A stretch of DNA of 43,364 nucleotides, taken from Octopus sinensis. Lineage: Eukaryota. Below the pieces are notes generated by a model. It did not search any database and had not been told where the DNA came from. It saw only the letters and a list, made by a program, of their open reading frames with translations. Below are positions 1 through 29,659 of this stretch, in pieces. A program made the translations under genes and the position numbers. The DNA lies in assembly GCF_006345805.1 (NCBI RefSeq), contig NW_021834995.1:1-43364 (forward strand), given 5' to 3'. How positions within the stretch are numbered: the stretch's first letter is position 1; every line of letters begins with the position of its first letter.

Positions 1-129
1 TCATACATATATATATATACATAAGCATATATATATTATACATACATATAAAAGTAGGTAAATGGTACATGTGTATGGTGGCTACCCCCTTGTTATCGAG
101 TATGGCCATTGCGCGAAGCTTAATCAATG

Positions 130-546
130 TTGTTATCATGCAATGGTTGTGCAAGAAGATTTTTTTTTGAAAGTGAGGAAAGGCTGTGCACAGAGTCAAT
201 CCCACTAACTAAGCAACAGCAGCCATTATCCGAAAAAAAGAACAAGTCAACATCATCGGTAACCACTGAGCCGCAGATTTTATGTCAGAGTTATCCCAGT
301 TACCTGAGTTATCTTCTCCTAGAAGGATGCCCTAACAAAGGCTAGGAGTCCTTCACTCCCAATGGTTTAACTGCGTGATCGGGTATTCAGTCCAATTATT
401 TCTATGTCCTCGCGCATGATATTTATTGGATGGCCGTTGACGCTCAAGAGTTCCTCTGCCCTTTAACGGGTTTTGTTTATCATCCCGCAAGGTGTCCAAT
501 AAACACCCTCCTCACGAAGCAAGCTTGGTGGGGTTGCCAGTTTAGT
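130..546 (-). mobile_element. 5'UTR fragment of an RTE-type LINE
   Basis: 424-546 aligns by eye with 26032-26152, the 5'UTR of the RTE at 25-26 kb (shared gagttcctctgcccttt and cttggtggggttgccagtttagt), in the same orientation. No coding part is present. Confidence 0.5.
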
Positions 547-2218
547 ATATATTTTGACCCCTAATATGTTCACTTGATTAATAAGGCTTTTCCCCCCAGT
601 TAATAAGTACTATGCCTACTCATAATAAGTAACAGTCTCTTTCTCCAAATTTGAATAAATTTTAGATTTATATTTTTTCCTTTATTCTAACGTGTCAAAG
701 TACTTGGAACTTATAGACCAACTGTTGTGATGATATGCATAGGGTTTGTAATGTCTCTGCATTCTCTGTGAATGTTATTGTGACCATTTGACTTTGACCT
801 AGTTCTCCTAAGGCTGAATCTGTTCATCAAATAGTAGTAATTGGCATTTAGTTGTGACACTGCTGTCTTCTACATAAATTCCTTATATGGAGACATCCCC
901 TTTACCCCATTTCTATAATTAGAAAATCTTTATTGTCTCCTTTCATTTGTTCTTCCCTCTCAGAACATTACAGTAGTCTGGAACAACTGAATCTTAGTCA
1001 GTCAGTTGATGGGCTCCACTACCTCGAATGTTCTTAAAATTTAAATCCACATCTTTGTCTACGTATCTACCTTCTCTATAATGTTGCCACTTGATATGAA
1101 AATTTTTGTATTAATGAAAAACCTCTATAATTGGCTGATGAGTGCTCAGCATTTTAAAACTGTTGTAATATTTACAACATTTAATAAAATGATGTAGTAT
1201 GAAACGATCATACCAAATTACCGGAGTCATTCTTGTTGCTTATTTTGATGAGATATATATATATGAACTCAGGTACAAGATTTTCTGGGCAAGAAATTCC
1301 CTCCCAAAATCCAAGGCTTGGAAGAGTTCGAAGTGAACCTACTGAAGCTCATGTTTGTGTATATATGTGCATATATATGTATGTATATACGTTTGTATAT
1401 GTAAGTATATCATATGTTGTGTATATATATATATATATATATATTTCTCAAGGACCACCAAGAGCAAAAGAAACGAGAATTTCTCCGTTCATACGCTCTA
1501 ATCAGGCAACACATGGACACTCTGGACATCATCCTAGGAGGTGACTGCACCAGGGAAGACCAAAAGGATGGAGAAAACATCCAGGACCCAACAAAAGACA
1601 CAAGCAAGAAAACTGCAACCATGGGAAACAATGGCACATGTCCAGCTCCCAACACAACTGAAGACCAAAGAGGTGCAATGGCCGCAAAAAAGGAAAGCAC
1701 CCTAAAATCAACAGAAAACTAAAGAGGTAAAAGACAAGAAAACTAAAACAAACACTGTTCAGAAAAAAACAGAAGAACCCCAGCAAGAACTATAAAGGCA
1801 AAAGCAGAAACATTTCCAAATTCTACCTGAAGGGAAACTGCTGGCATGGCGTCGAAGGTGCAAAATGTCATTTTGCACATCAGAGGTCCTGCCAAGGCCG
1901 CATGGACACAAGACAAAAATCCCTCCCTCGAGGAGAACAAAAAGAGAAAGAAAAATATAAAAGAAGGAAAAATGGCGCACTGACCACTCCTGAAAGACGT
2001 TATGCGGATGTAGTGCGCGGTAGCCCAACAAATGGCCAGCTTCACCCAAATGTGAGAAGGGCAGCAGCTGAACAGCAATCATTTTTGTGCATGGCACAAA
2101 AAATTGTTCAGCAGCTGACCTGGCTACAAACACAAAGCTGGAACTACCACCACATAAGGCCACCACCAACAGATGCAGGATGGCCACCACAGACACCAAC
2201 ACACACACCACAAAAATA

Positions 2219-2940
2219 TTTCTACTGAATGTAGGAGGGCTGCTGCGCAGCAACTGTAAAAGGAAAATCTCATTCCTGAGAGACCTTGTGGCATGCAATC
2301 AAGCTATATGCATGGCACTCATAGAAACGCATCTTGGATCCGATATAGGGGATGCAGAAATACACATACCGCAATATGCAGTCATATGCTCAGATAGAAA
2401 AAGGAGGAGCCATGGTGGAGTTGCAATGTACATCCAAGATGACCTCACGCTGCAGGTCCTGTTGTCATATTCAAACTCAGTGTGTGACGCGCAAATTGTA
2501 CACATAAGACACCTGAATATCATCATATGTACTACATATTGCCCACTGGATGCCCCAAATCACTCAGGCATGTTTGAAGACTGCCTAACAAAAATAGGAG
2601 AAGTTCTCACCAACCTGGAACAACACAGTAGTGTATTCTTCATGGGTGACTTTAACTTCCCCAATGTGGAATGGCCTGGGGGGGGGGGCAGATGCTCCCA
2701 GGGATGACACACCATCAGCAGGCACAGGCAGAGTCCCTGCTCCATCTCACAAATGCCTTTTTCATGGAGCAAATAGTGCTGCAACCAACAAGGGCAGATA
2801 ATATACTGGATCTCTGCTTCACAAACAATATGGATATTATCCATAATGTTAAAGTGATGCCGACAATGATCTCGGATCACAACATAATAGAGCTGTCTAC
2901 GTATGGACCAAAAGCCCCCGCAGACACACAGCCTATATGA
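2219..2940 (+). pseudogene. APE endonuclease domain of CR1-group ORF2, frameshifted at G11 (2678-2688)
   Basis: ORFs 2087-2707 and 2671-2940 are consecutive parts of one endonuclease domain in different frames. Confidence 0.85.
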
Positions 2941-3037
2941 AGCATCCACAATCTCTCCAACTTAAACTTTCATAAAGCAAATTGGAAGTTGATCGAGAAA
3001 GAGATCATCAAGCAAGATTGGCCTAGAGACAGCCACA

Positions 3038-3963
3038 GTGCACCAGAAAATAGGACCTCTCTTCCAAAAAGATGGCTCTCTCACAGGAAATCCCACGAGG
3101 ATAAGTGAAATACTGAATGAACAGTTCCAAAGTGTGTTCACTACACCTCTAGGACACAGGCAAGTAAACAACCCAGAAGAATTCTTTGCCACTTTACCTG
3201 CGGCCAAAGACGCAAAAATTGAGTACATCAACATTGAAGATGATGATATCACACACGCCATAGATGAGATTGACACAAACTCAGCTGCTGGACCTGATGG
3301 ATTTCCAGCGATCCTTCTCAAATCATGCAAACGAGCCCTTGCAAAACCGCTACAGCTTCTTTTTCAGAGCTTTCTTGCAAGTGGTAAGCTCCCAGTCAAA
3401 TTGAAAGAGGCGGTAGTATGCCCTATCCATAATATGCTAAAAATTATAGGCCTATCTCTCTGACCTCACACATCTGCAAGAAACTAATCATGTTCCTTGA
3501 AGAAAATGACTTGCTGACTGACACCCAACATGGATTTTGACCAGGTAGAAGCTGCCTAACACAGCTCCTGCAACGCTATGACTGGGTATTAAAACAGCTA
3601 CTAAATGGCTCAAATGTGGATGTGATATATCTCGACTTTGCAAAGGCCTTTGATAAAGTCGACCACGGTATGATTTGTCACAAAATGCATGGTCTCGGCA
3701 TAGGCGGAAAACTTGGAGAGTAGCTGCACAACTTCCTAAAAGATAGAAGGCAGGCAGTTGTGACCAATGGAGCCACCTCCAAGGAAACACAAATAACAAG
3801 CAGTGTTCCACAGGGCACTGTCTTGGGGCTACTGCTGTTCATAGTGGCCCTTTCAGACATGCCCTCAGTTGCTAAGATGGTCACCCTTGATAGCTATGCA
3901 GATGACACAAAAGTCTCCCACACAATACAAAACCCTAGAAATATTGCACATCTGCAACACACA
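3038..3963 (+). pseudogene. Reverse transcriptase domain of CR1-group ORF2 (frameshifts, stops, truncated after YADD)
   Basis: ORFs 3038-3463 and 3760-3966, with QHGF and DFAKAFDKV motifs in between. Confidence 0.85.
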
Positions 3964-3980
3964 TAATATATATATACATA

Positions 3981-4013
<33 letters not shown>

Positions 4014-4047
4014 ATATATTATATATAATATATAATATATATATTAT

Positions 4048-4080
<33 letters not shown>
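3964..4080. repeat. (TA)n microsatellite
   Basis: Direct reading. Confidence 0.95.
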
Positions 4081-4084
4081 GTTT

Positions 4085-4137
4085 ACTTCAGGAAACCTAC
4101 CTACTTCAGGAAACCTACCTACTTCAGGAAACCTACC
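4085..4137 (+). repeat. 18-bp tandem repeat x3 (acttcaggaaacctacct) at the RTE 5' junction
   Basis: Units 4085-4102, 4103-4120 and 4121-4137; the last runs into the RTE endonuclease sequence (FRKPTSHLVTYRSG). Confidence 0.95.
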
Positions 4138-7065
4138 AGCCACCTAGTCACCTACCGATCGGGCCAACATACCAGCCAAATTGACTACATCCTTGCAAGG
4201 CAAAGGGAGAGATGGCTGCTTATAAATGCCAAAACCTTCCCAGGCGAAGAATGTACCCCACAACATAGACTGGTAGTTAGTGACTTTAGGATCAGGACTA
4301 GGAGGACAACCAGAAGACGACCAATATGGAGAAGAAGGATCTGGAAGCTTAAAGATCCTGCAAATGGACAGAGATTTAAGGACATATTACTTGAAGCCTT
4401 TGATGAAGTAGAAGGGGATAGAGCATCACAGAGGGTAGAAGACAACTGGACGTTTCTCAGGGACAACCTGCTGAGAGCCACTGACCAGATCTGTGGCTGG
4501 TGCAAAGTCCCCTCTCGACCTAGAATAACGTGGTGGTGGAACAATATTGTAGACAGGGCTATTAGAGAAAAAAGACAGGCTTGGAAGGTCTGGAAAAATG
4601 GGGGTAGCAGGGAATTGTATCAGACTGCCAAAAGAGAAGCTAGGAGACTTGTTTATTTAGCCAGAGGGGAAGCAGATAAGAAAACATTTGCCAATGTTCT
4701 GCGCCGTGAGGACCAAAGACTGGAGGTGTTTCGCGTTGCAAGACAGTGTGTGAGAGAGAATCGTGATGTGGTAGGAGAGAAGTGTGTTTGCATGGAAGAT
4801 GGTTCACTTGCGCTAAATGAGGATGCAAAGAGAGAGGTTTGGAGACGCAACTATGAAAAGTTGCTGAATAAAGAAAATGAATGGGATAAAGAGAGTCTGC
4901 TGAATGTTGACCCAACAGAGGGACCAGCTATCCGAGTTGATAGTTCCTTGGTAGTTAAGGCAATTAGAAGCATGAAGACAGGGAAAGCCCCAGGCCCATC
5001 AGGAATCACTGCAGAGATGCTCAAAATGTCTGGTAGTGTCAGCTATAGCCTAGTCACCCGTATAGTTAATCAGGTGATACACAAAGGAGTCATACCCAAT
5101 GACTGGTGTAGCAGTATAATAGTCAACTGCTACAAAGGTAAAGGTGACGCCCTAGATACAAATAATTACAGAGGTATCAAGCTGTTGGATCAGGTGATGA
5201 AGGTTACGGAGAGGGTCATAGCCCAACTAATTAGAGAGAGAGAGTTAGTTTAGATGAGATGCAGTTTGGGTTCGTACCAGGGAAAATACCACTGATGCTA
5301 TATTCCTGGTAAGGCAGCTGCAGGAGAAATACCTAGCCAAAGATAAGCCCCTGTACCTGGCTTTTGTTGACATGGGGAAAGCCTTCGACAGGGTCCCCCG
5401 ATCCCTTATCTGGTGGTCAATGAGGAAACTAGGGATAGATGAATGGTTAGTGAGAGCTGTGCGAGCCATGTACAGGGATGCTGCTAGTAAGGTGAGGGTT
5501 GGCAACGAGTACAGTGAAGAATTCTGGGTAGAGGTAGGGGTCCACCAAGGCTCAGTCCTCAGTCCCCTCCTATTTATCATAGTCCTCCAGGCAATAACGG
5601 AGGAATTCAAGACAGGATGCCCTTGGGAGCTCCTCTATGCTGATGACCTTGCTCTAATTGCTGAGTCACTATCAGAACTGGAGGAGAAGTTTCAGGTGTG
5701 GAAACAAGGATTAGAATCGAAGGGCCTTAGAGTCAATCTAACTAAAACCAAAGTCGTAATCAGTAGGAAGGTAGAGAAATCACAAATGCCTTCAGGTAGA
5801 TGGCCCTGCTCGATCTGTAGAAAAGGTGTAGGTAGAAACTCTATAAGATGCACCAAGTGTAAGCTATGGACACATAAGAGGTGCAGCAATGTCAAAGGAA
5901 GGCTAACTAGGAAGATGGTTTTTGTATGTGGCAGATGCTCAGGAACAATAAACACTGAAAATGCTCTGAGACCAACTTCCGTCACTTTCCAGGGAGAAAA
6001 ACTAGAAATAGTTGATAGCTTCCGTTACCTAGGTGACCAAGTCAGCAGCGGGGGTGGGTGTGCTGAAAGTGTAACTGCTAGAGTAAGAATAGCTTGGGCA
6101 AAGTTCAGAGAGCTCTTACCTCTGCTGGTGACAAAAGGCCTCTCGCACAGAGTAAAAGGCAGGCTGTATGATGCGTGTGTACGAACAGCCATGCTACATG
6201 GCAGTGAAACATGGGCCGTGACTACTGAGGATATGCGTAAGCTCGCAAGAAATGAAGCCAGTATGCTCCGATGGATGTGTAATGCCAGTACTCATACTCG
6301 GCAGAGTGTAAGTATCTTGAGAGAAAAGCTGGACCTAAGAAGCATCAGTTGTGGTGTGCAAGAGAGACGTTTGCGCTGGTATGGGCATGTGGCGAGAATG
6401 GATGAAGATAGTTGTGTGAAAAAGTCCCACACCCTAGCGGTTGAGGGAACCTGTGGAAGAGGCAGACCCAGGAAAACCTGGGACGAGGTGGTGAAGTACG
6501 ACCTTCGAACTTTAGGTCTCACTGAGGAAATGACTAGAGACCGAGACCTCTGGAAGTGTGCTGTGCGCGAGAAGACCCAGCAGGACAAGTGAGACCATAA
6601 CCCGTGGCCTTCTACATGGGATGGAGCCAGCCTACGTATGCATACCTTCCCTTCTTTGGACACAAAACTCTACTTGTGAAGACCTGTTGAGGCAAGTGAG
6701 GATCAGAATCAAATTCGATCAATGGAAATTGCAGATGAGTTACCAGTGCCGGTGGCATGTAAGAGAACCATCCGTTCGTGACCGTTGCCAGCGCCGCCCC
6801 GACTGGCCTCGTGCTGGTGGCACATAAAAAGCACCATCCGTTTGTGGCCATTTGCCAGCTCTGTCTGGCACCTGTGCGGGTGGCACGTAAAAAGCACTCA
6901 CTACACTCACGGAGTGGTTGGCGTTAGGAAGGGCATCCAGCCATAGAAACACTGCCAGATCTGACTGGGCCTGATGAAGCCTTCCGGCTTCACAGACCCC
7001 AGTTGAACCGTCCAACCCATGCTAGCATGGAAAACAGATGCTAAACGATGATGATGATTGATGAT
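4085..7065 (+). mobile_element. 5'-truncated RTE-clade LINE, family 1 (PHD-containing RT), young copy with full 3'UTR and (GAT)n tail
   Basis: Frame is open from about 4123 to 5253 (QIDYIL, QHRLVV, KAPGPSGI, NYRGIKLL). Two frameshifts near 5235-5290, then ORF to 6592 (FDRVPR, GVHQGSVLSPLLF, LLYADDL, GRGRPRKTW). 3'UTR ends aaacgatgatgatga. Confidence 0.95.
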
Positions 7066-7067
7066 CG

Positions 7068-7130
<63 letters not shown>

Positions 7131-7293
7131 ATATATATATATATATGTGTGTGTATATATATATATATATATATGGTGTATATATATATATATAATGTGT
7201 GTTATATATATATATATATATGTGTGTGTATATATATATATATACATATGTGTGTATAATATAATATATATATATATGTGTGTATATATATAA

Positions 7294-7334
<41 letters not shown>

Positions 7335-7402
7335 ATATATATATATATATATATGTGTGTAATATATATATATATATATGTGTGGTATATTATATATATA
7401 TA

Positions 7403-7434
<32 letters not shown>

Positions 7435-7530
7435 ATGTGTATATATATATAGATATATATATATATATATATATAAATATATATACATATGTATACATAA
7501 TATACATATATATATACATAATATAAAATA
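7068..7530. repeat. Long (TA)n/(TG)n compound microsatellite
   Basis: Direct reading; the poly-YI ORFs are artefacts. Confidence 0.95.
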
Positions 7531-8049
7531 CAGTGTACATTTAAATACATTAAGATGTTTCCATCATAGGACTCCCTTACGCTAGAAGGAACAGCTAAAG
7601 TCAAAACCACTAATTAGGGATAAATTCTTGAAGGGAATGAAAAATAAAAACATTTACCATCTATTTCCTGGACCATGGTATCTGACTTATTTTAGCAAAT
7701 AAAATAAAATAGTTTGCCAGGTGAAGTCTTCATCAACAGGTACGCTAAGACTAAACTTATAAACATGAGGCCAATCCAGCATGTGCCTCTTGCTTATACA
7801 TTTTAATTTTTTTCAAATCCACTGCACAAGTGCAGTTTTTTGACAGCAGCAAAAAGATGCTGGCCATTTCTTCGAACATAGACGTCAAATTGCCATTTAA
7901 TGGCGATTTGACATCTATGTTTAGCATATAGGGTGTCCACTTTAGTGGTCATTCCTCTTAATTTTGTATGTAACACAATTTTTAATCTTCGGATTTTTAA
8001 ATATGCTAAGCCACTGGTTTTAATTGATTAACATCAATTTCTACCCTTA

Positions 8050-8267: not shown

Positions 8268-8325
<58 letters not shown>
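8050..8325. repeat. (TA)n/(CA)n/(TG)n block (8050-8125) and (GA)n block (about 8271-8324)
   Basis: Direct reading. Confidence 0.9.
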
Positions 8326-8327
<2 letters not shown>

Positions 8328-9087
8328 GAAATGGGATATAGGAACTCATACAAAGCAGAGGGTAGCTATGCATTGCTTAGCAACAATCAGCTGGAAGCCA
8401 CTAGCCAGTTCTTTTGTTGGGGAGAAGAGGAGCAAGAAAACATTAAACAACACAGTCATGAATTGCAGAGATACACAAAAGAGGTTTGAAAGGAGGGAGA
8501 GCAGAGAAAGAGTAATGAATATTTAGGAAATATATCTCCAAGCTAGATTTAGCAACAAGTTATGTTTATCTAGTTATTGGAGAAACAGCAAGTAGGAGGT
8601 TTGTTAATGTTCTACATCAAAATGATGAGAAGTATAAAAGTATTTCAAACTGCAATTTAGTACTTTAGAACAAGGAACTGGAATATTACCAAGGACAGCT
8701 GTTTCCAAAATAACAGAGTATAATGCTTTCAATACCTAACCACTTGTGACTATCTCTAGATATGTAAAAGATAGAATAGAAACAAACTTATTTTAGAGTG
8801 TTTGTATTAAAATCTACCTTCTTAATTTTATTCAAGGATCTTTTGTTTTAAACACCAAATTAATTAGGACGTCATTTACTAAATTCTTCCAAAATTAACT
8901 GAAGTAATTAAGCAGCATATTTTTTTTATTAGAAAGTAGGTCTTTACCAGTCACTACACTGCCAGTAAAAAATATTTATTAATTATGCACATGTTTGTTT
9001 TAACAGTAGACTGTTATATAGTGAAAGTATCGTTAGTTACTATGGTGATAACACTCTACCTATCATCTATCTATCTTTCATGGACAC

Positions 9088-9132
<45 letters not shown>
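9088..9132. repeat. (CT)n microsatellite
   Basis: Direct reading. Confidence 0.95.
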
Positions 9133-9136
<4 letters not shown>

Positions 9137-9289
9137 GTATTTCTCTCTCAACAACCTGTTTTTTTTTTCTTGAAACAAATTTTAATTCTATCTTTTACAC
9201 ACACTCTTTCCCTCTCACTGGTATATTTGACATGTTATATATCATTGGTTTTTCTAATTGTTCTTTGGTGCAGTTTAGTTGAGTTGTTG

Positions 9290-12530: not shown

Positions 12531-15500
12531 TATTGAAATGTTGGAGTGATGCCATGTTGATGTGTGTGGTGTGCGAGAAGTAAGATGGAGATTCCTCATA
12601 GGTAAGAGACAGAGACTCAAATTCTTCTGGGCTGGCAGGAAGGATGGGGTGGGTGGAGTAGGCATACTATTAGCAGAAAAGTGGGTAGATAAGGTAATTG
12701 AGGTAGTCACAGTATGAGATAAGGTAATTAATATGAGACTTATCATAGGTAAATTAACAGTTACGTTCATCTGTCTATGCTCCTCAGTCTGGGCTGACTG
12801 ATGAGCAGAAGGACCAATTCTATGAGGTCCTTTTGCAGACTACCTCAACAACAAATGACAAAGACTTTGTTATTGTAGTTGGTGACTTCAATAGACATGT
12901 TGGACAGTATCCCCATGGATTCTAGGGAGAGCATGGGGGCTATGGTTTTGGACCTAGAAATGGGGAGGAACAAGATTGCTGGAGTTCTGGGGTGCAAATG
13001 ATCTCAAGATCTATAACACTAACTTCAAAATACCAGCCAGCCACCTAATCACTTATCAGTCTGGTGAGTAACATAACCAGGTAATGAGATAGATGGATGC
13101 TTAAAAATTGCAAAGTCTTTCCCAGGTGAAGAGTGTACAACCCAACATAGGTCACTAGTTAGCGACTTCATAATTAGAGCTAGAAAGACTCGGAGAAATA
13201 AACCAATCTGGAAAAGAAGACTATGGAAGCTCAAAGACCCAGCAAACACACAAAATTTTAGAGATGTACTAATGGAAGCTCCTGAAGAAAGAGAGGAAGA
13301 GTTTCAGGTCATATAGCTTAGAGGACAATTAGAAGTTCCTGCAGGACAATCTACTGAGGATTACAGATGAAATCTGTGGTTGGTGCAGACTCCCAGCTAG
13401 ACCAAGGGTGATATGGTGGTGGAGCAAGGAAGTTGACAGTGATATAAAAGAAAAAAGGACAGGCCTAGAAAGACTGGAAAATGGTGGAAGCAGAGAATTA
13501 TATCAGGTAGCCAAAAGGGCAGCTAAGCATCAGGTATACATAGCAAAAGGAGCAGCTGAAGGTAAAAGATTTTCATGTTTTAGAGCATGAGGATTAGAGG
13601 CATGAGGTGTTCAGGATTGTAAAGCAGTGTATCAGAGAAAATAGATATATGGTAGGTGAGAAATGTGTGTAAATGGGTAATGGTAGGCTTACACTTAGTG
13701 ACTCAGAGAAGAATGATGCATGGAAGTGTCACTATGAAAGGTTACTGAATGTGAAAAATGAATGGGAGGAGAATTTACCAAATATTGAACCAAGTGAGGG
13801 ACCAACCATCAGAGTTGATAGCAGCATAATAATTAAGGATATGAAGACAGGGAAAGCCCCTGGGCCATCAGGAATCACTGCCAAGATGATTAAAATTTCC
13901 AAGAGTAAAGATGATGCCTTAGAAACAACTACAGAGACATTAAACTGCTACACCAAACCATGAAAGTTACTGAGAGGATTATAGCTCAATTGATTAGGGA
14001 TAGAATTGAAACTAGATGAGATGCAGTTTAGTTTTGTACCTGGGAAGAGTATCACAGATGCCATCTTCCTAGTGAGACAACTGCAGGAAAAGTACTTGGT
14101 CAAAAGTAAGCCATTGTACTTAGCCTTCGTCAACCTGGAGAAAGCTTTCAACACAGTTCCCCACTCTGTTATATGGTGGTCGCTAAGGAAGTTAGGAATA
14201 CAGGAGTGGCTTGTTAGAGCTGTACAAGCATGTGCAGTGGTGCTGTCAGTAAGGTGAGAGTCAGCCATGAATAAAGTGATGAATTTAGTGTACAGGTAGG
14301 GGTTCACCAGGGCTCAGTTCTCAGCTCACACTTATTCATTATAGTCCTCCAGGCCATAACAGAATTATTCAAAACTGGTGCCCATGGGAACTGCTATATG
14401 CTGATGACCTTGCTCTTATTGCAGAATCTTTAGCAGAATTGGAATTAAAGAGCCTTGAAGTTAACCTAGCAAAGTAGTTGTTAGTAAGAAAGAAGATAAA
14501 ACTCTCTTTCCATCAAGTAAATGGCCCTGCTCAATATGTAGGAAAAGAATGGACAAAATTCCATTCACTACAACCAGTGTAATCTATGGACACATAGGAG
14601 GTGCAGTAGAATCACAGGTAGATTAACAGATAAAGTCATCTTTGTATGTGGCAGATGTGCAGGAACAATAATCACTAAGAGTACATGGGACTTAGATTCT
14701 CTCAAATGCGCAGGAATCTCTCTTGAAGTTGTAGATAGTTTCTGTTACCTACTTAGGTAACCAAATTAGCAATGGTAGAGGATGCTCTGAAAGTACTGTT
14801 TCTAAAATAAGAATTGGGTGAAGGAAGATCAGAGTACTATTACCTCTGTTGGCAACAAAAGGGCTCTCTCTCTCAGAGTGGAAGGTAGACTATATGATGC
14901 TTGTGTGCAAACAGCTATACTCCATGATAGTGAGACATGGGCTCTGAATGCAGAAGACATGCATAGACTGGAGAGAAATGAAGGTAGTATGCTCCATTGG
15001 ATATGTAATATCAGTGCACATGGACAGCAAAGTGCAAATGTATTGAGAGAAAAGTTGGGCATAAGAGGAATCAAATGTAGCATGCAAGAGAGAAGACTAC
15101 GTCGGTTTGGACATGTGATGCATATGTATGAAGACAACTGCATAAAGAAGTGCCAATCACTGAAAATGGATGGTACTCGTGGAAGAGGGAGACCCAAGAA
15201 GACATGGGATCAAGTGGTAAGGACCAAGCTCAGGATGTTATGGTTTCATGGAGGAAATGACAATGGACTGAGATGTCTGGCGATATGAAGTTCTTGAGAA
15301 AACCCATACAGATCAGTGAAACTGAGTGTTAGAAGCGCTGTGTGTCCCACCCACACTTAACAAGAAAGCTTCTCACACACTCTTCCACAACAAACCAAAC
15401 TACATCTCTACATCTCTTCTCTTCCTCACATTTCCACTTCATGCATTATGCTTACCTCTGACTCCCCAACCCTGTCCTCTTGACCCTGTGCCACTGTATC

Positions 15501-18678: not shown

Positions 18679-20151
18679 ATCATCATCATCATCATCATCA
18701 TTTAACGTCCGCTTTCCATGCTAGCATGGGTTGGACGATTTGACTGAGGACTGGCAAACCAGATGGCTGCACAAGGCTCCAATCTGATCTGGCGGAGTTT
18801 CTACAGCTGGATGCCCTTCCTAAGCCAACCACTCCGAGAGTGTAGTGGGTGCTTTTACATGCCACCGGCACGAGGGCCAGTCAGGCGGTACTGGCAACGG
18901 CCACACTCAAAAAGTGTTTTTTACGTGCCACCTGCACAGGAGCCAGTCCAGTGGCACTAGCGACAACCTTGCTCAAATGTTTTTTCACGTACAACCAGCA
19001 CAAGTGTCAGTAAAGTGATGCTGGTAACGATCACGCTCGAATGGTATATTTTATGTGCCACTGACACGGATGCCAGTCATTGAGCTTGATTTAGATTTCA
19101 CTTGCCTCAACAGGTCTTTGCAAGCAGAGTTTAGTGTCCAAAGAAGGAAAGGCAGGCAAAAGTGGGCTGGTTACACTCCTGGCATAGGCCACAAGGTTAT
19201 GGTCTCACTTGGTTTGCCAAGTCTTCTCAAGCACAGCATATTTCCAAAGGTCTTGGTCACTAGTCATTGCCTCAGTGAGGCCTAATGTTCGAAGGTCGTG
19301 CTTCACCACTTCATTCCAGGTCTTCCTGGGTCTACCTCTTCCACAGGTTCCCTCAACCGCTAGGATGTGGTACTTTTTCACACAGCTATCCTCATCCATT
19401 CTCGCCACATGACCATGCCAGCGCAAACGTCTCTCTTGCACACAACATCTGATGCTTCTTAGGTCCAACTTTTCTCTCAAGGTACTTACACTCTGTCAAG
19501 TATGCACACTGACATTACACATCCATCGGAGCATACTGGCTTCATTCCTTGTGAACTTACACATGCCCTCAGTAGTCACGGCCCATGTTTCACTACCATG
19601 TAGCATGGCTGTTAATACACATGCATCATACAGTCTACCTTTTACTTTGAGCGAGAGGCCCTTTGTCACCAGCAGAGATAAGAAATCTCTGAACTTTGCC
19701 CAAGCTATTCTTATTCTAGCAGCTACACTTTCAGTGCACCCTCCCCCACTACTGACTTGGTCACCTAGGTAACGGAAGCTATCAACTACTTCTAGCTTTT
19801 CTCCCTGGAATGTGATGGAAGTTGTTCTCTGTGCATTTTCAGTGTTTATTGCTTCCAAGCATCTGCCACACACAAAAACTATCTTCCCAGTTAGCCTTCC
19901 TTTGATATAACTGCACCTCTGGGTACATCTTATAGAGTTTCTACCTACGCCTTTTCTACAGATCAAGCAGTGCCATCTACCTGAAGGGATTTATGGTTTG
20001 TCTGCCTTCCTACATATTAGGACTTTGGTTTTAGCTAGGTTGACTCTAAGGCCCTTCGATTCTAATCCTTGTTTCCACACCTGAAACTTCTCCTCTAGTT
20101 CTGATAGTGACTCAGCAATTAGAGCAAGGTTGTCAGCATAGAGGAGCTCCC
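18678..20151 (-). mobile_element. 5'-truncated RTE family 1 copy (from WELLYAD to (GAT)n tail)
   Basis: ORFs 19496-19966 and 19205-19480 are homologous to the 5372-6592 ORF; YADD is mutated to YADN; (CAT)n at 18678-18701. Confidence 0.95.
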
Positions 20152-24560: not shown

Positions 24561-25226
24561 AATCCTACTAAAATTTCAAGACTTCTTAATTCTATTTTTT
24601 ACCTTGTTTTTGTATTCAGTTCTTCTGTTTGTGTGTATGTGTGTGTGAGAGAGAGAGAGAGAGAGATGTGGATTATATATATAGCTGCATTTATATTACA
24701 CTACACTAGCTCTTGCTGCTTCTATTTTTACACTGACTATTTAGGAAGAGTCAGGGATTTGTTATTTAAAATTTTTAAAAAGTCAATGTGAGAGACAGTC
24801 ATATGTTAGTTATTTAAAGACACAAGACAGACATTCACTGATGCAACCAAGCTCAGTTAACAATCAATTATCTCTTCAAAGTCCATTATTGTAACCTTGT
24901 GCCACAAGAATAAAGCTATTTTTACTGGGTCAAACTATGTGTAACACTGCCAGTGTATTTCATTATGGTTGCATCTGAACAATGTGTTAATACTTGCTAT
25001 AAAACTATATCATTGTTGTTTAACACAAGGAAAACCTTGATTAAGCAGCTCTATGATTACAATGCATTCTAGGCAGTAACATCTTATCCTTCAGGAGATA
25101 ACTACATTATTTAATGTATCCATTCCTTACTTAAGATAGTAAAATATGACTTGAAAGAGATTTAGTTACATTTTCTATACAGAGCCTCTTTATTGGTTCA
25201 GGCGTGTTGTGTATGTGTATATATAT

Positions 25227-25635
25227 CCTCGGGGGAGCTTTCCAGTTTCCGCACGTGTACTGACTTGATGGCAAAACCAACACCAGCCTCACGACGCTCT
25301 TCGCTGCTGCGACCACTCCAAAAGAAAGTGTAGCCGCCGCCTGTCTCTGTCAGCTGGCCTTTGTCTGCAAGGCGGGTCTCGCTCAGTGCTGCAATATCGA
25401 CATTGTATCGGCTCAGTTCTCTGGCCACCAGGGCAGTTCGTCTCTCTGGTCTGTCCGCTTTGGTGTTGTCAAGTAGAGTTCTCACGTTCCAAGTTGCGAA
25501 AGTGAGCACCTTTGTTTGTTTTCTTCTTTCTTTGTTTCGACCGCTTGGAAAGGATCCCCGCCAGCCGCAGTTTGCTGACCAGGGTGAGGTGAGGCAGGCT
25601 ATGTTTAGGGCAACCTTTTCTAGCCCTGTCCTCAT
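25227..25635 (-). pseudogene. RTE ORF N-terminus (APE endonuclease, part 1)
   Basis: TFATWNVRTLLD, RRTALVARELSRYNVDIAALSETR, GYTFFWSG, GVGFAIK, ends KLESSPE. Confidence 0.92.
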
Positions 25636-26228
25636 GCTGGGGAGGCGAGCAGAGCGATCCTGAAGAGGGCTGCTCGGTCACTCAGGAGGCTGCCGGACTC
25701 CACTGCTGCCTCAGTTCAGTGAGGGGTGACCACATGTCCTGAGCCGCCAGTGTGTGGGTTCACGACTGCAGCTCCCAGTGTATCCTCACCTGCTACTTCG
25801 CCGTTTCCCCATCGCCACAGGACTTTGTGATGGTGTCATGACGTCATGATGTCGTGACATGTGCATGACTTGGATTATAGTGAGGGTGACTTGCGCAGGA
25901 TCAGCCTCACTCTCTTGTCCTGGTGCGCCGGATCCAGTGGCAAGACAAAGTCAAGACGACTGGGGTAGACCAGGATGCAGGAGCTGCCGGAAGGTGGCAC
26001 GCATGGCGCACTTAGGGGCTCCACTCCGGATTTTGGATGGCCATTGACTCATGAGAGAGTTCCTCTGCCCTTTGACAGGTTTTGTTTTTAGTCCTGCTGG
26101 GTGTCCAAATCACCCTCCTCACCAAGAAATCTTGGTGGGGTTGCCAGTTTAGTCACCAACGACCCGACCATGTAACAGGTTGTACTGGGTTACATGTTAC
26201 CAGCAGCTCCAAGCGGAGACCTGACACT

Positions 26229-26943
26229 AACTTGGTCTAGAGTTTCAAGGGCGATGGAATGAACCGTGTCCCTGAATGATTCCCACTGCTCATCGATGCT
26301 GGACTGGTCATTCCGAATGTCCAACAGCTTGCTGTCCATACGTGACTGGAGATCTTGTGCAGTCAGCTGGTTCTTTAATTTCGTGATGTTAAGCTTCCTC
26401 GTCACTTTCTGACCCTGTGGTCTTCTCTTAGGTCGGATGTAGAAATCCATCCTGGAGATGATGAGGCGATGGTCCGTCCAGCAATCAGCTCCGCACATGG
26501 CTTTGACCAGTCTCACGTCCCACCTGTCTTTCGCCCTGACGATGACGTAATCTATCAGATGCCAGTGTTTGGAGCGTGGTTGCATCCATGATGTCTTGTT
26601 GCGTGTTGGCAGACGGAACAAGGTGTTGGCGATGGTAAGATCATGAGAGGCACACGCACGCAGGAAGAGCTGCCCGTTGTTGTTGCACTTTCCAATTCCT
26701 TGCTTTCCCAGTACGCGATGCCAGGCTTGGTGGTCAGTCCCGACATGGGCGTTAAAATCCCCAAGGAAGATGAGCTTCCCAGGCTGGGCTGACGTGATGA
26801 GGGAGTCGAGTTCCTCATAGAACCTGTCCTTAACTTCTTCAGGGTTGGTCATGGTGGGGGCGTAAGCACTGATGATGGTCGCACTAGTCTTGTTTCCAAG
26901 TGGGAGCTGCATCTTCTTCAGCCGATCGTTGATACCCTCGGGG
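26229..26943 (-). pseudogene. RTE APE endonuclease, part 2
   Basis: PEGINDRL, TIISAYAPT, LGDFNAHVG, HWHLIDYVIVR, WTDHRLI, WESFRDTVHS. Confidence 0.92.
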
Positions 26944-28931
26944 ATACGCAGACAAACACGACACCAAGAAATTCTACAAGGCGCTGAAAGCTGTCTATGG
27001 ACCGCAGTTCTCCTTTGGATCAACCCCCCTGCTCAGCTTGGATGGAACCTCACTCCTGACTAACAAGAAGCTGATCCTGGAGAGATGGGCGGAGCATTTC
27101 AACATCGTGCTCAACCGACCAGCCCAGATCAACGAGGAAGCCATCGCACGACTCCCCCAGGTGCCGACAAACCACGAGCTGGCTGTTCCCCCTGCAGTCG
27201 AGGAAGTGAGCAGAGCCATCAAAAAAATGTCCACCGGCAAAGCTCCAGGCTCTGACGCCATCCCTGCAGAGGTGTTCAAGTCGGGCGGCCCCACCATGAT
27301 CAGTCAGCTCACCAGCCTGTTCCAGTCGATGTGGGACAGGGAACAACTCCCTCAAGATTTCCGGGACGCAACAATCGTCCACATTTATAAGCGGAAAGGA
27401 GATCGGCAGTCCTGTGACAACCACCGAGGAATCTCCCTCTTGTCCATAGCAGGCAAGATCCTGGCCCGAGTCCTGCTTGACCACCTTCTGGAACACTTGG
27501 AGCAAGGCCTTCTCCCTGAGAGCCAGTGTGGCTTCCACGCGGGTCAAGGGACCACTGACATGATATTCGCCGCCCGCCAGCTCCAGGAGAAATGCATGGA
27601 GCAGCACCTTGTCCTCTGCATGACCTTTGTTGACCTCACCAAGGCTTTCGATACAGTCAGTCGGGAGGGACTATGGAAGGTCATGGGAAAATTTGGTTGC
27701 CCCAGCAAATTTATTGCAATTGTCCGCCAGTTCCATGACGGAATGACAGCCAGAGTCCTTGAAGACGGCAACTCATCTGAAGCCTTCCAGGTGACCAACG
27801 GAGTCAGGCAGGGCTGTGTCCTAGCCCCAACACTGTTCAGCATCATGTTCTCGGCAATGCTGTCCGACGCCTTTAGGGACTGCAAGTCCGGTATTGACAT
27901 CAAGTACAGGACAGACGGGAAACTTTTCAACTCCAGAAGATTGCAGGCTGTCACAAAGGTAAGGGAGACAGTCGTCAGAGACTTTCTCTTTGCTGACGAC
28001 TGCACCCTTAATGCAATCGATGAGCAGGAGATGCAGCTCGAGATGGACAGGTTCTCATCAGCCTGTGACAACTTCAGTCTCACCATCAGTGATGTTTCAG
28101 CCAGCTCCCGGCAAACAATACCATGAGCATCAGATAAAGGTGAACGGACGGATCCTACGAGCGGTGGAAAATTTCACCTACCTGGGCAGCACTCACTCCT
28201 GCAATGCCAACATAGATGCTGAAACCATCAACAGAATCTCCAAGGCAAGCAGCGCATTTGGGAGACTGCGAAAGAAAATCTGGGAGCGGAGAGGAATCAG
28301 CCTCAACACCAAGCTGAAAGTCTACCGGGCAGTCGTGCTTACCACCCTACTATACGGCTGCGAGACGTGGACTGCTTACCGAAGGCACGAGCGCCAGATA
28401 AACCACTTCCACCTCAGGTGTCTTCGGAACCTCCTTCACATCCGCTGGCAGGACAAAGTCCCAGACACGGAAGTTCTGAAGCAGGCAGATCTCCCTAGCA
28501 CCATCACAATCATGCGCAAGGCCCAGCTGAGATGGGCGGGCCACGTCTCCCGCATGTCCGACACTCGCATCCCAAAACAGCTCTTCTGCGGTGAACTTAG
28601 CCAGGGCAAACGCAAAGTCGGAGGGTAGAAGAAGCACTTCAAGGACAGTCTCAAGGTCTCTCTCAAAGACTTCTCCATCGGCACAGAGACCTGGGAGACA
28701 CTTGCTGCCGACCGCTCATCCTGGCACAGCGCAATCACCACAGGAGCAGGGACAGCCGAGGAGGGACGGATTCGGTCAGCAGAGCAGAAACGCCAGATGC
28801 GGAAAGCCAGAGCCGCCTGCACCAGTAGCACGGCCCCTACCCACTTCTGCCCCACCTGTGGGAGGGGCTTCCTTGCCCGGATTGACCTCACCAGCCACCT
28901 CCGGTCTCATGGCGGCAGTTCCACCAGATGA
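26942..28931 (+). pseudogene. RTE reverse transcriptase plus C-terminal C2H2 zinc finger (frameshift near 28090, premature TAG at 28626-28628)
   Basis: KAPGSDAIP, NHRGISLLS, DLTKAFDTV, GVRQGCVLAPTLF, LFADDC, FTYLGS, QLRWAGHV; CPTCGRGFLARIDLTSHLRSH at 28848-28910; TGA at 28929-28931. Confidence 0.93.
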
Positions 28932-29659
28932 TGTCAGTGGTCATCTTCGAACCCGAAGGACGAACATTATTATTGTATGTGTATATGCAGTTTTGTTTGT
29001 GGAATATGATGCTGTGTGTGGTGTGAATGGTATTGTTGCTTAGAACCCATGTCAACCCTGACCCAGTATACTTATGAACAAAAGTAATCCAACCATCCAA
29101 TATAGTATTTCAGACATAATATATCTAGATCCAATGTATCTAATGTGTTCTTCCTGATTTTTAAGAAGGTAGAGTGTGATTAAAGATGTATTTGGATACA
29201 ATTTCCAGCAGATCTTTTAATTCAAATTATAGCAATAATAGATACCATGCTATGTTTATATAAAATACATATTGCAAATAATAAAGTTAATATTGATTGC
29301 TTACACAAGATACAAGATGAATTCTTGAAAAGGAAACGTTTAGATATATTCATTCTTCATCATCATTTTATGATTAAGATACATATGAAGAGAAAACCCA
29401 CTAATCATCGATGTGCATGATCAGTTTGTTTTTATCCTCTTTTTGTTTTGTCTTTGCATGGTCTTTATGACTGGACAGCTTCCATTTCACCAACTCCACT
29501 TTACAGCATAGACTTGGTACAAAATAATGTAAGTAGATCAAGACTAAAAGGTTCCCTTCCACACTGTCTCAGTTACTGCTCTCCTAGATGAGTTACTTTC
29601 AATCAAACAGTTTTAGTAAAATACTGTAATTATTTAATTGACTCCTACCACATGTATTG

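What the first reader, a model, noticed from the sequence alone, without database searches (positions are those of the whole stretch)
25210..28986. One RTE insertion whose 5' half is inverted AND circularly permuted (A' B' C) inside a 13-bp TSD
Seen: the minus strand reads endonuclease part 2 (26943-26229), then 5'UTR, then endonuclease part 1 (to 25227); the plus strand from 26942 carries the rest of ORF2 and the tail. The A/B breakpoint sequence cctcgggg appears twice (25227-25234 and 26936-26943). The B'/C join has ggg microhomology and lacks the linker expected between LETL and GYAD (roughly 60 codons by analogy with BovB-like RTEs). tgtatgtgtatat flanks the whole unit. Established: simple twin priming gives one contiguous inverted block (5'UTR-EN1-EN2). 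Inference: this needs either two successive internal priming/inversion events or a circularised 5' cDNA (B joined to A) reopened with an 8-bp stagger during one insertion. Such a structure seems unusual for RTEs.
Basis: partly seen in the sequence, partly recalled or inferred. Interest (0 to 1): 0.82.

Follow-up and report, generated by a model that had tools for sequence, protein, structure and literature searches.

The report
Doubly inverted RTE retrotransposon insertion
One copy of an RTE-type jumping gene was inserted with its front 1.7 kb split into two pieces that are each flipped in place, most likely because the copying enzyme started a second DNA copy in the middle of the RNA, ran to the RNA's front end and then hopped back to fill the remaining gap; a rare pattern that seems to match one reported for human L1, here seen in an RTE.

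Summary
A 3,751-bp RTE-type non-LTR retrotransposon (25223-28973) lies between two exact copies of tgtatgtgtatat, the only two in the window. Against intact relatives, the plus strand reads: reverse complement of [5'UTR + small ORF1 + endonuclease aa 1-96], a 3-nt filler, reverse complement of [endonuclease aa 93-329], then forward [aa 401 to end, 3'UTR, (ATT)n tail]. The first two blocks overlap by 8 nt (cctcgggg). About 213 nt (71 codons) between blocks two and three are missing. The inverted 5'UTR appears to reach the family's canonical 5' end right at the junction with block two.

Best explanation (about 0.6): one target-primed reverse transcription event with twin priming. The internally primed cDNA ran to the 5' end of a full-length RNA. 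It then switched to the only uncopied stretch of the same RNA and copied back to its own start, giving the 8-nt overlap. It joined the tail-primed cDNA through GG(G).

A preprint reports what appears to be the same class for about 0.5% of somatic human L1 insertions ("twin priming and 5' switching"). A circular template is possible but not needed. I could not test read support, an empty site or other copies from this genome. Interest is moderate.

The parts
25210..25222 (+). Left target-site duplication, tgtatgtgtatat
   Evidence: Only two exact copies in the window, at the two ends of the element. 13 bp is within the 7-15 bp range reported for RTE-clade LINEs (PMC6007223).
25223..25226 (+). 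Filler ATAT at junction J1. Three of the four bases match the element's next bases (canonical ..GATAC|CCTCGGGG), so it may be microhomology at the internal priming site or (TA)n slippage.
   Evidence: Sequence read, compared with the intact A/B boundary in L003, L006, L009 and with the window's own B copy.
25227..25635 (-). Block A: N-terminal part of ORF2. It holds endonuclease aa 1-96 of P0004 and ends in ..SSPE at the 8-nt overlap. The reading frame is open.
   Evidence: Pfam Exo_endo_phos positions 1-78. tblastn P0004 aa 1-96 -> 25509-25222, 78% identity. blastn 77-84% to relatives.
25632..25847 (-). Remnant of the small ORF1 (72 codons, MTS..VLWRWG..AGEDTLGA..HTGGSG..), with two internal stops
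   Evidence: Translation. Nine homologous proteins of 50-82 aa in the public databases, E down to 1e-27. P0116 and P0008 N-termini match at 25826-25641.
25848..26229 (-). 5'UTR, in sense on the minus strand. 25848-26034 is 77-84% identical to relatives. 26035-26229 is lineage-specific, but its length fits the relatives' (about 194 nt against about 170-205 nt) and its first 29 nt match the canonical 5' terminus 18/29.
   Evidence: Homology boundary at 26034 in L004, L006 and L007. The canonical 5' end CAGTGGCTAGAC is fixed by the 16-bp TSD of L004 and by different flanks in L006 and L009. In the anchored 29-mer scan, 26229(-) is the joint best of about 86,700 positions. Gapped local alignment of the rest is not significant.
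26230..26232 (+). Filler ACT at junction J3, between the RNA 5' end and the restart of the cDNA. Its boundaries are uncertain by about 2 nt.
   Evidence: B homology to L001 ends at 26233. The 5'-terminus match starts at 26229.
26233..26943 (-). Block B: the rest of the endonuclease and the start of the linker (P0004 aa 93-329, PEGINDRL...SIALETLDQ). The frame is open. Its first 8 nt (26936-26943) duplicate the last 8 nt of block A (25227-25234).
   Evidence: Pfam Exo_endo_phos_2. tblastn. blastn 83% to L001 over 26943-26233. cctcgggg occurs only twice.
26942..28973 (+). Block C: ORF2 from GYAD (P0004 aa 401) through the RT and the C-terminal CxxC..HxxxH motif to the stop at 28929-28931, then the 3'UTR and the (ATT)n tail. 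It is disabled by a deletion of about 17 nt with a frameshift near 28088-28090 and by a TAG at 28626-28628.
   Evidence: RVT_1. tblastn P0121 aa 14-397 -> 26939-28090 and aa 403-676 -> 28089-28910. The 3' end aligns with L005 up to ..GAAGGACGA and with L004.
28974..28986 (+). Right target-site duplication, tgtatgtgtatat

Best explanation
This is a single retrotransposition event of a full-length RTE-type RNA, made by twin priming followed by one intramolecular template switch.

1. The bottom-strand nick primed cDNA 1 at the (ATT)n tail. cDNA 1 copied the RNA up to the GYAD codon (block C).
2. The 3' end of the cut top strand (...gtatat) annealed inside the endonuclease region at the PEG codons and primed cDNA 2. 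cDNA 2 copied the RNA to its very 5' end (blocks A and 5'UTR, antisense on the plus strand).
3. After run-off and the addition of about 3 nt, the end of cDNA 2 switched to the only part of the same RNA still single-stranded, the stretch between the PEG site and the tip of cDNA 1. It landed about 213 nt short of that tip (..ALETLDQ).
4. cDNA 2 then copied back to its own starting point and 8 nt into it. That gives block B and the 8-nt overlap.
5. The 3' ends of cDNA 2 and cDNA 1 paired through GG(G), and each served as template for second-strand synthesis. The 213 nt that neither cDNA copied were lost.

Shown: the anatomy, the breakpoints, the TSD, the overlap, and a U' block that appears to reach the canonical 5' end. 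Inferred: the order of steps, the use of one RNA molecule, and the cause of the stop (strand displacement or an RNase H remnant).
For: One exact 13-bp TSD pair flanks the whole unit. The tail abuts the right TSD and the A/B breakpoint abuts the left TSD, as twin priming predicts.

All three blocks map collinearly and without other gaps onto intact relatives. Only the strand and the order differ.

A' and B' overlap by exactly 8 nt of canonical sequence. Independent breakpoints in a 1.7-kb region would fall this close in roughly 1% of cases (my estimate).

The best match in the whole window to the family's 5'-terminal 29-mer lies 3 nt from the end of B'. The 5' terminus itself is defined by the TSD of L004. 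So the jump started where the RNA ended.

Short fillers and microhomologies (ATAT, ACT, GG) sit at the junctions.

Identity to relatives shows the same pattern for every block, with U/A consistently more conserved than B or C. That is compatible with one source lineage.

Precedents exist. 'Twin priming and 5' switching' was seen in 20 of 3,598 somatic L1 insertions (10.1101/2024.08.27.596794). [quoted passage not shown]
Against: No reads, no empty allele and no second copy from the same genome could be examined. A single event, and the reality of the assembly, are therefore inferred from the sequence alone.

The distal 194 nt of the 5'UTR are not significantly alignable to relatives by gapped local alignment. 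The claim that U' reaches the true 5' end rests on an 18/29 anchored match and on the fit in length.

The ATAT filler lies in a (TA)-rich target and is ambiguous.

Nothing proves that block B came from the same RNA molecule rather than from a second RNA of the family. Only the 8-nt closure argues for it.

The geometry of the published L1 class could not be checked, because the figure is not held.
Confidence: 0.6

Rival explanations
1. Circular template. The 5' 1.7 kb (5'UTR-A-B) existed as a closed RNA or cDNA circle with a B-end-to-5'-end junction. It was copied for one lap plus 8 nt, or opened with an 8-bp stagger, during the insertion.
For: The inverted part is an exact circular permutation with an 8-nt terminal redundancy. 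One lap around a circle would give exactly this.
Against: A linear RNA with a run-off and a switch gives the same product without an extra molecule. The circle junction would have to join the (presumably capped) 5' end to an arbitrary internal site with 3 extra nt. No splice signals are seen at the B end or at the C start in relatives. No independent trace of circles was found.
Confidence: 0.08
2. Twin priming with a switch to a second RNA molecule of the same family, or a separate third priming event, rather than back onto the same RNA.
For: Template switching between different RNAs is well documented for L1 chimeras (PMC13174262; PMC4476161). The blocks cannot be told apart by divergence.
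Against: The coincidence that block B ends within 8 nt of where block A starts would be unexplained.
Confidence: 0.12
3. Rearrangement after insertion. An ordinary full-length or simply twin-primed copy was later reshuffled by two DNA inversions or by replication template switching.
For: Two adjacent in-place inversions of a forward full-length copy would formally give A'U' B' C. The copy is old enough to carry a frameshift and three stops.
Against: One inversion breakpoint would have to fall exactly at the element/TSD boundary. Two events would have to share the PEG breakpoint with an 8-bp duplication, and a 213-nt deletion would also be needed. No inverted repeats that could drive such inversions were found.
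Confidence: 0.07
4. Assembly artefact: mis-joined or chimeric reads in a repeat-rich region.
For: The window is full of TEs and microsatellites. No read data are available.
Against: The junction repeats are only 2-8 bp, too short to mislead an assembler. Nothing but those 8 bp is duplicated. The structure closes exactly on a 13-bp TSD. No near-identical copies that could be confused were found in the window, and none above 84% nucleotide identity or 83% amino-acid identity turned up in the databases.
Confidence: 0.05

Closest known systems
Twin priming of human L1 (Ostertag and Kazazian 2001; described in PMC2912911 and 10.1101/2024.08.27.596794)
   Same: One TSD pair. The 3' part is forward and ends in the tail, and the 5' part is inverted. 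There is a possible microhomology at the internal priming site and a 2-3-nt microhomology at the inversion junction, with a deletion at the junction.
   Different: Classical twin priming gives one contiguous inverted block (B' A' U'). Here the inverted part is two blocks in permuted order (A' U' then B'). The internally primed cDNA also reached the 5' end of a full-length RNA, whereas L1 cases are usually 5'-truncated.
'Twin priming and 5' switching' in somatic L1 insertions of tumours (bioRxiv 10.1101/2024.08.27.596794)
   Same: [quoted passage not shown] It is explained by transfer of the internally primed cDNA to a not-yet-copied part of the same RNA. It is rare: 20 of 3,598 insertions.
   Different: That work concerns L1 in human tumours, not an RTE in a germline genome. 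I could not check from the text whether the published cases have the same coordinate order. A switch launched from the true RNA 5' end and a closure on the cDNA's own start (8-nt overlap) are not described there.
End-to-end template jumping by non-LTR reverse transcriptases (R2: Bibillo and Eickbush 2002, 2004, cited in PMC2912911) and U6/L1-type chimeras (PMC4476161, PMC13174262)
   Same: The RT reaches the 5' end of its template, adds a few nucleotides and continues on another template, leaving short fillers at the junction.
   Different: Those jumps go to another RNA or to the target DNA and give sense-oriented chimeras. Here the acceptor is an internal site of what seems to be the same RNA, and the jumping cDNA is the twin-primed one.

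Membership tests
RTE-clade non-LTR retrotransposon | One large ORF with an N-terminal apurinic-type endonuclease followed by a reverse transcriptase | tested here: met
   Exo_endo_phos, Exo_endo_phos_2 and RVT_1. The blocks are collinear on the intact relatives P0004, P0003 and P0008.
RTE-clade non-LTR retrotransposon | No long gag-like ORF1; at most a very short upstream ORF. Element length about 3-4 kb. | tested here: met
   72-codon ORF1 conserved in nine database proteins. The insert is 3,751 bp, about 3.96 kb with the lost linker.
RTE-clade non-LTR retrotransposon | Short 3'UTR ending in a microsatellite-like repeat instead of poly(A); TSD mostly 7-15 bp | tested here: met
   Tail cattattat in the window, (CAA)n in the Oculina relative L004. 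TSDs of 13 bp (window) and 16 bp (L004). Ranges and tail types are taken from PMC6007223.
RTE-clade non-LTR retrotransposon | Phylogenetic placement of the RT inside the RTE clade | not tested
   There is only indirect support. Many relatives are named 'craniofacial development protein 2-like', a name that to my knowledge derives from a BovB/RTE endonuclease. No reference RTE sequences were available for a tree, and two literature searches for that link found nothing.
Twin-priming insertion | A single TSD pair encloses a forward 3' part ending in the element's tail and an inverted 5' part | tested here: met
Twin-priming insertion | The inverted block is contiguous, and its 3'-most element coordinate abuts the flank next to the forward block's start coordinate | tested here: not met
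   The flank abuts the PEG breakpoint (aa 96), not the coordinate next to GYAD. The inverted part is two blocks in permuted order. It is therefore a variant, not the classical form.
Twin-priming insertion | Microhomology and a small deletion or duplication at the inversion junction | tested here: met
   GG(G) at 26941-26943. 213 nt are missing between B and C.
Twin priming and 5' switching (L1 class of 10.1101/2024.08.27.596794) | [quoted passage not shown] | tested here: met
   Block B' lies between A'U' and C and is antisense.
Twin priming and 5' switching (L1 class of 10.1101/2024.08.27.596794) | The same coordinate order of segments as in the published dot plots | not testable with these tools
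   Only the text and legends are held, not the figure.
Circular-template copy (one lap) | Circular permutation with terminal redundancy | tested here: met
   8-nt redundancy at 25227-25234 and 26936-26943.
Circular-template copy (one lap) | Independent evidence for the closed circle, such as its junction in RNA, cDNA or other copies | not testable with these tools
   No transcript data and no same-genome data. An exact look-up of the junction-spanning ORF found nothing.

The most novel reading that the evidence does not exclude
The RTE reverse transcriptase copied a covalently closed or functionally circular 5' RNA segment (5'UTR-ORF1-endonuclease) for one lap plus 8 nt. If so, RTE RNAs would form 5'-terminal circles, or a 5'-3' bridged ribonucleoprotein would let the enzyme pass from the RNA's 5' end to a defined internal site. 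The break of an unrelated copy (L002) within about 10 nt of the same ALE.L site would then mark a preferred RNA end or acceptor.
Probability: 0.07. Interest if true: 0.7.

Novelty: new member of a known kind. Interest (0 to 1): 0.4.

Why it matters
It is a cleanly resolved natural record of what an RTE reverse transcriptase can do in a single integration. The record shows internal (twin) priming, synthesis to what appears to be the true 5' end of a full-length RNA, and a template switch back to the remaining single-stranded gap of the RNA. The switch stops at the cDNA's own origin, and joining uses 2-3 nt of microhomology. Twin priming and its switching variant have been documented almost only for mammalian L1. 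An example in the RTE clade, which spreads widely by horizontal transfer, suggests these are general properties of target-primed reverse transcription. For annotation, it shows that two antisense fragments plus a sense fragment inside one TSD should be scored as one insertion, not three.

Tried and rejected
1. Cryptic splicing as the cause of the missing linker (ALETL|G ... CAG|GYAD). Rejected: relatives L001, L005 and L006 have no GT after the B end, and block B runs two codons past LETL.

2. The 205 nt between the conserved 5'UTR and B' as foreign filler or a 5' transduction. I considered this because homology to Oculina and two other loci stops at 26034 and because a 121-nt stretch recurs at 426-546. 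I now think it is largely wrong. Relatives carry a further 170-205 nt of 5'UTR there, the canonical 5' terminus is fixed by L004's TSD, and it matches the window at 26229 as the joint best site of about 86,700. Gapped local alignment of the remainder is still not significant, so a lineage-specific replacement of the middle of the 5'UTR remains possible.

3. Structured or cellular RNA in the filler. No Rfam hit.

4. More copies from the same genome. There were no near-identical proteins (best 77-83% amino-acid identity), the exact look-up of the junction ORF was empty, and both metagenome DNA scans were empty.

5. A general breakpoint hot spot at ALE.L. L002 breaks there too, but 36 of 46 homologous proteins read through into the canonical linker.

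6. Nested independent insertions. Rejected: blocks A'U' and B' have no 3' tail or TSD of their own.
Full report
**What is there**

The 13-mer tgtatgtgtatat occurs only at 25210-25222 and 28974-28986, and cctcgggg only at 25227 and 26936. The 3,751 bp between the two 13-mers are about 50-55% G+C, against about 34% in the flanks.

Pfam finds the first third of an apurinic-type endonuclease on the minus strand at 25201-25635. It finds the rest of the endonuclease on the minus strand at 26193-26945, and a reverse transcriptase on the plus strand from 26942.

The endonuclease query finds 1,904 homologues (E <= 1e-10), spread across animal genomes and marine metagenomes. Many are named 'craniofacial development protein 2-like'. 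Intact relatives (P0004, P0003, P0008) show the normal order: endonuclease, then ...ALE.LG + about 70 aa + ...EIQGYAD, then RT.

tblastn of P0004 maps:
- aa 1-96 to 25509->25222,
- aa 93-329 to 26942->26238,
- aa 401-635 to 26939->27646.

So the split, the 8-nt overlap, the two antisense blocks and the missing 71 codons are all real. At the DNA level the same three blocks are contiguous, collinear and on one strand in L003, L006/L007 and L009. The gap corresponds to 212-217 nt in L005 and L006.

**The stretch between the two endonuclease halves**

On the minus strand, upstream of the endonuclease, lies a degenerate 72-codon ORF (25847->25632, two stops). Its product has nine homologues of 50-82 aa in the databases, and it matches the N-termini of P0116 (Oculina) and P0008 (Xenia). 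It is the family's small ORF1.

Nucleotide identity of 77-84% to relatives continues to window 26034 in L004, L006 and L007. Beyond that point the relatives share a further 170-205 nt. Their common sequence starts at CAGTGGCTAGACCTTGCTTGGAGC, and upstream of it their flanks differ. In the Oculina copy L004 this start is bounded by a 16-bp TSD (atattctattcctgga / atattctattcttgga), and that copy's 3' end is ...GAAGGACGA(ACA)n. This defines the canonical termini of the family.

The window's corresponding 194 nt (26035-26229) are not significantly alignable by gapped local alignment. However, an ungapped scan of the canonical 29-mer over both strands of the window puts 26229(-) among the three best of about 86,700 positions, with 18 of 29 matches. 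That site lies 3 nt from the end of block B.

I conclude that the inverted block runs to, or within a few nucleotides of, the 5' end of a full-length RNA, and that the middle of the 5'UTR is lineage-specific. A 121-nt piece of it (26033-26153) has a second, isolated copy at 426-546 with 84.5% identity.

**Junctions**

- **J1:** TSD + ATAT + cctcgggg. The canonical antisense sequence is ..gatac|cctcgggg, so three of the four filler bases could be microhomology between the top-strand end and the RNA.
- **J3:** the plus strand reads ...gacacta | act | tggtctagag. That is the 5' end of the RNA, a 3-nt filler, then the restart at ..ALETLDQ.
- **J4:** the plus strand reads ...cctcgg[gg]atacgcagac. 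GG is shared by B' and C. A third G is possible if the lineage's Gln codon is CAG.
- **J5:** ...ggacgaacattattat + TSD.

**Mechanism**

The left flank abuts the A/B breakpoint, and the tail abuts the right TSD. That is the signature of twin priming: the cut top strand primes a second cDNA inside the RNA (PMC2912911).

Blocks A'U' and B' lie on the same DNA strand in that order. The simplest path is one cDNA that was primed at the PEG codons and ran off the 5' end of the RNA. It picked up about 3 nt and re-annealed to the only RNA segment still single-stranded, which lay between its own origin and the tip of the tail-primed cDNA. It then copied that segment back to its origin and 8 nt into it.

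The stop can be explained by limited strand displacement, or by an RNase H remnant of the RNA. That step is inference. The two cDNA ends then paired through GG(G). The 213 nt that neither cDNA had copied were lost.

This explains every feature with one RNA and one switch. In particular, it explains why B ends where A begins.

[quoted passage not shown] It proposes transfer of the internally primed cDNA to a not-yet-copied region of the L1 RNA (10.1101/2024.08.27.596794). Template jumping from RNA 5' ends is established for the R2 enzyme (references in PMC2912911) and is invoked for L1 chimeras (PMC13174262).

**Rivals**

- **Closed circle.** A circular RNA or cDNA copied for one lap gives the same permutation, but it needs an extra molecule for which there is no trace.
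- **Second RNA molecule.** This leaves the 8-nt closure unexplained.
- **Later DNA inversions.** One breakpoint would have to fall exactly at the TSD, two events would have to share a breakpoint, and a deletion would also be needed.
- **Assembler error.** This is unlikely, because the junction repeats are only 2-8 bp and nothing else is duplicated.
- **Splicing.** Rejected as the cause of the missing linker.
- **Nested insertions.** Rejected because the antisense blocks have no tails or TSDs of their own.

**What the element is**

The following features fit the RTE clade as described in PMC6007223 and PMC13174262:
- a single large endonuclease-RT ORF,
- a 72-codon ORF1,
- a length of about 3.9 kb,
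- a short 3'UTR with an (ATT)n tail, or (CAA)n in the Oculina relative,
- a 13-bp TSD.

I did not make a phylogeny. The copy is dead: it has two stops in ORF1, a deletion of about 17 nt with a frameshift near 28088, and a TAG at 28626. Both endonuclease blocks still have open frames.

**Limits**

No copy from the same genome, no reads and no empty site could be obtained. The best database relatives reach 75-84% nucleotide identity, and both metagenome scans were empty. The source organism is unknown. The relatives come from corals, other marine invertebrates and marine metagenomes.

**Verdict**

It is a rare variant of twin priming, of a kind that seems already reported for human L1, here documented at base resolution in an RTE. 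Interest is moderate.

Noticed in passing
window 426-546: An isolated second copy (84.5% identity, same strand) of the 121-nt central stretch of this element's 5'UTR (26033-26153). It is not attached to any other RTE sequence, and both its ends are sharp. It may be a remnant of another copy or an independent short repeat captured by the 5'UTR.
   Followed up: partly
window 26035-26200 versus L004, L006, L009-L011: The middle of the 5'UTR cannot be aligned between the window's element and its relatives, although the sequence on its 3' side is 77-84% identical, its first 29 nt match the family's 5' terminus 18/29, and the lengths fit. This suggests modular replacement or very fast evolution of this part of the 5'UTR.
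   Followed up: partly
L002:1195-1225 (Tara Oceans metagenome contig): An unrelated copy of the family (about 75-80% identical) loses homology within about 10 nt of the site where the window's block B ends (ALE.L), and continues into AT-rich foreign sequence. This may be coincidence: 36 of 46 homologous proteins read through this point.
   Followed up: partly
L003:5538-6814, L004:5624-7396, L009:825-3009: Several relatives are internal-deletion derivatives that keep the 5'UTR, ORF1, part of the endonuclease and the 3' end. L004 has an intact 16-bp TSD, so such short forms were themselves mobilised (non-autonomous derivatives).
   Followed up: no
window 25632-25847 (minus); P0240-P0248: A conserved ORF1 of about 72 aa (MTS..VLWRWG..AGEDTLGA..HTGGSG..TEAAVE..) with no Pfam domain precomputed for any of its nine database homologues. 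It is found as a separate small protein in nine database clusters.
   Followed up: partly
window 25835-25858: Three tandem GTCATGAC units containing the palindrome TGACGTCA (CRE-like), right at the ORF1 start in the 5' region. This is a possible internal promoter element.
   Followed up: no
window 2087-6592 (+), 12770-15288 (+), 19232-19966 (-): A different non-LTR retrotransposon (only about 25% identical to the RTE; RVT_1 followed by a PHD-like finger), plus two fragments of related elements.
   Followed up: partly
window 1-60, 7041-7610, 8300-8400, 9080-9140: Long TA/TATG-type and (GA)n microsatellite tracts. The window is repeat-dense, and I recognised no host gene in it.
   Followed up: no
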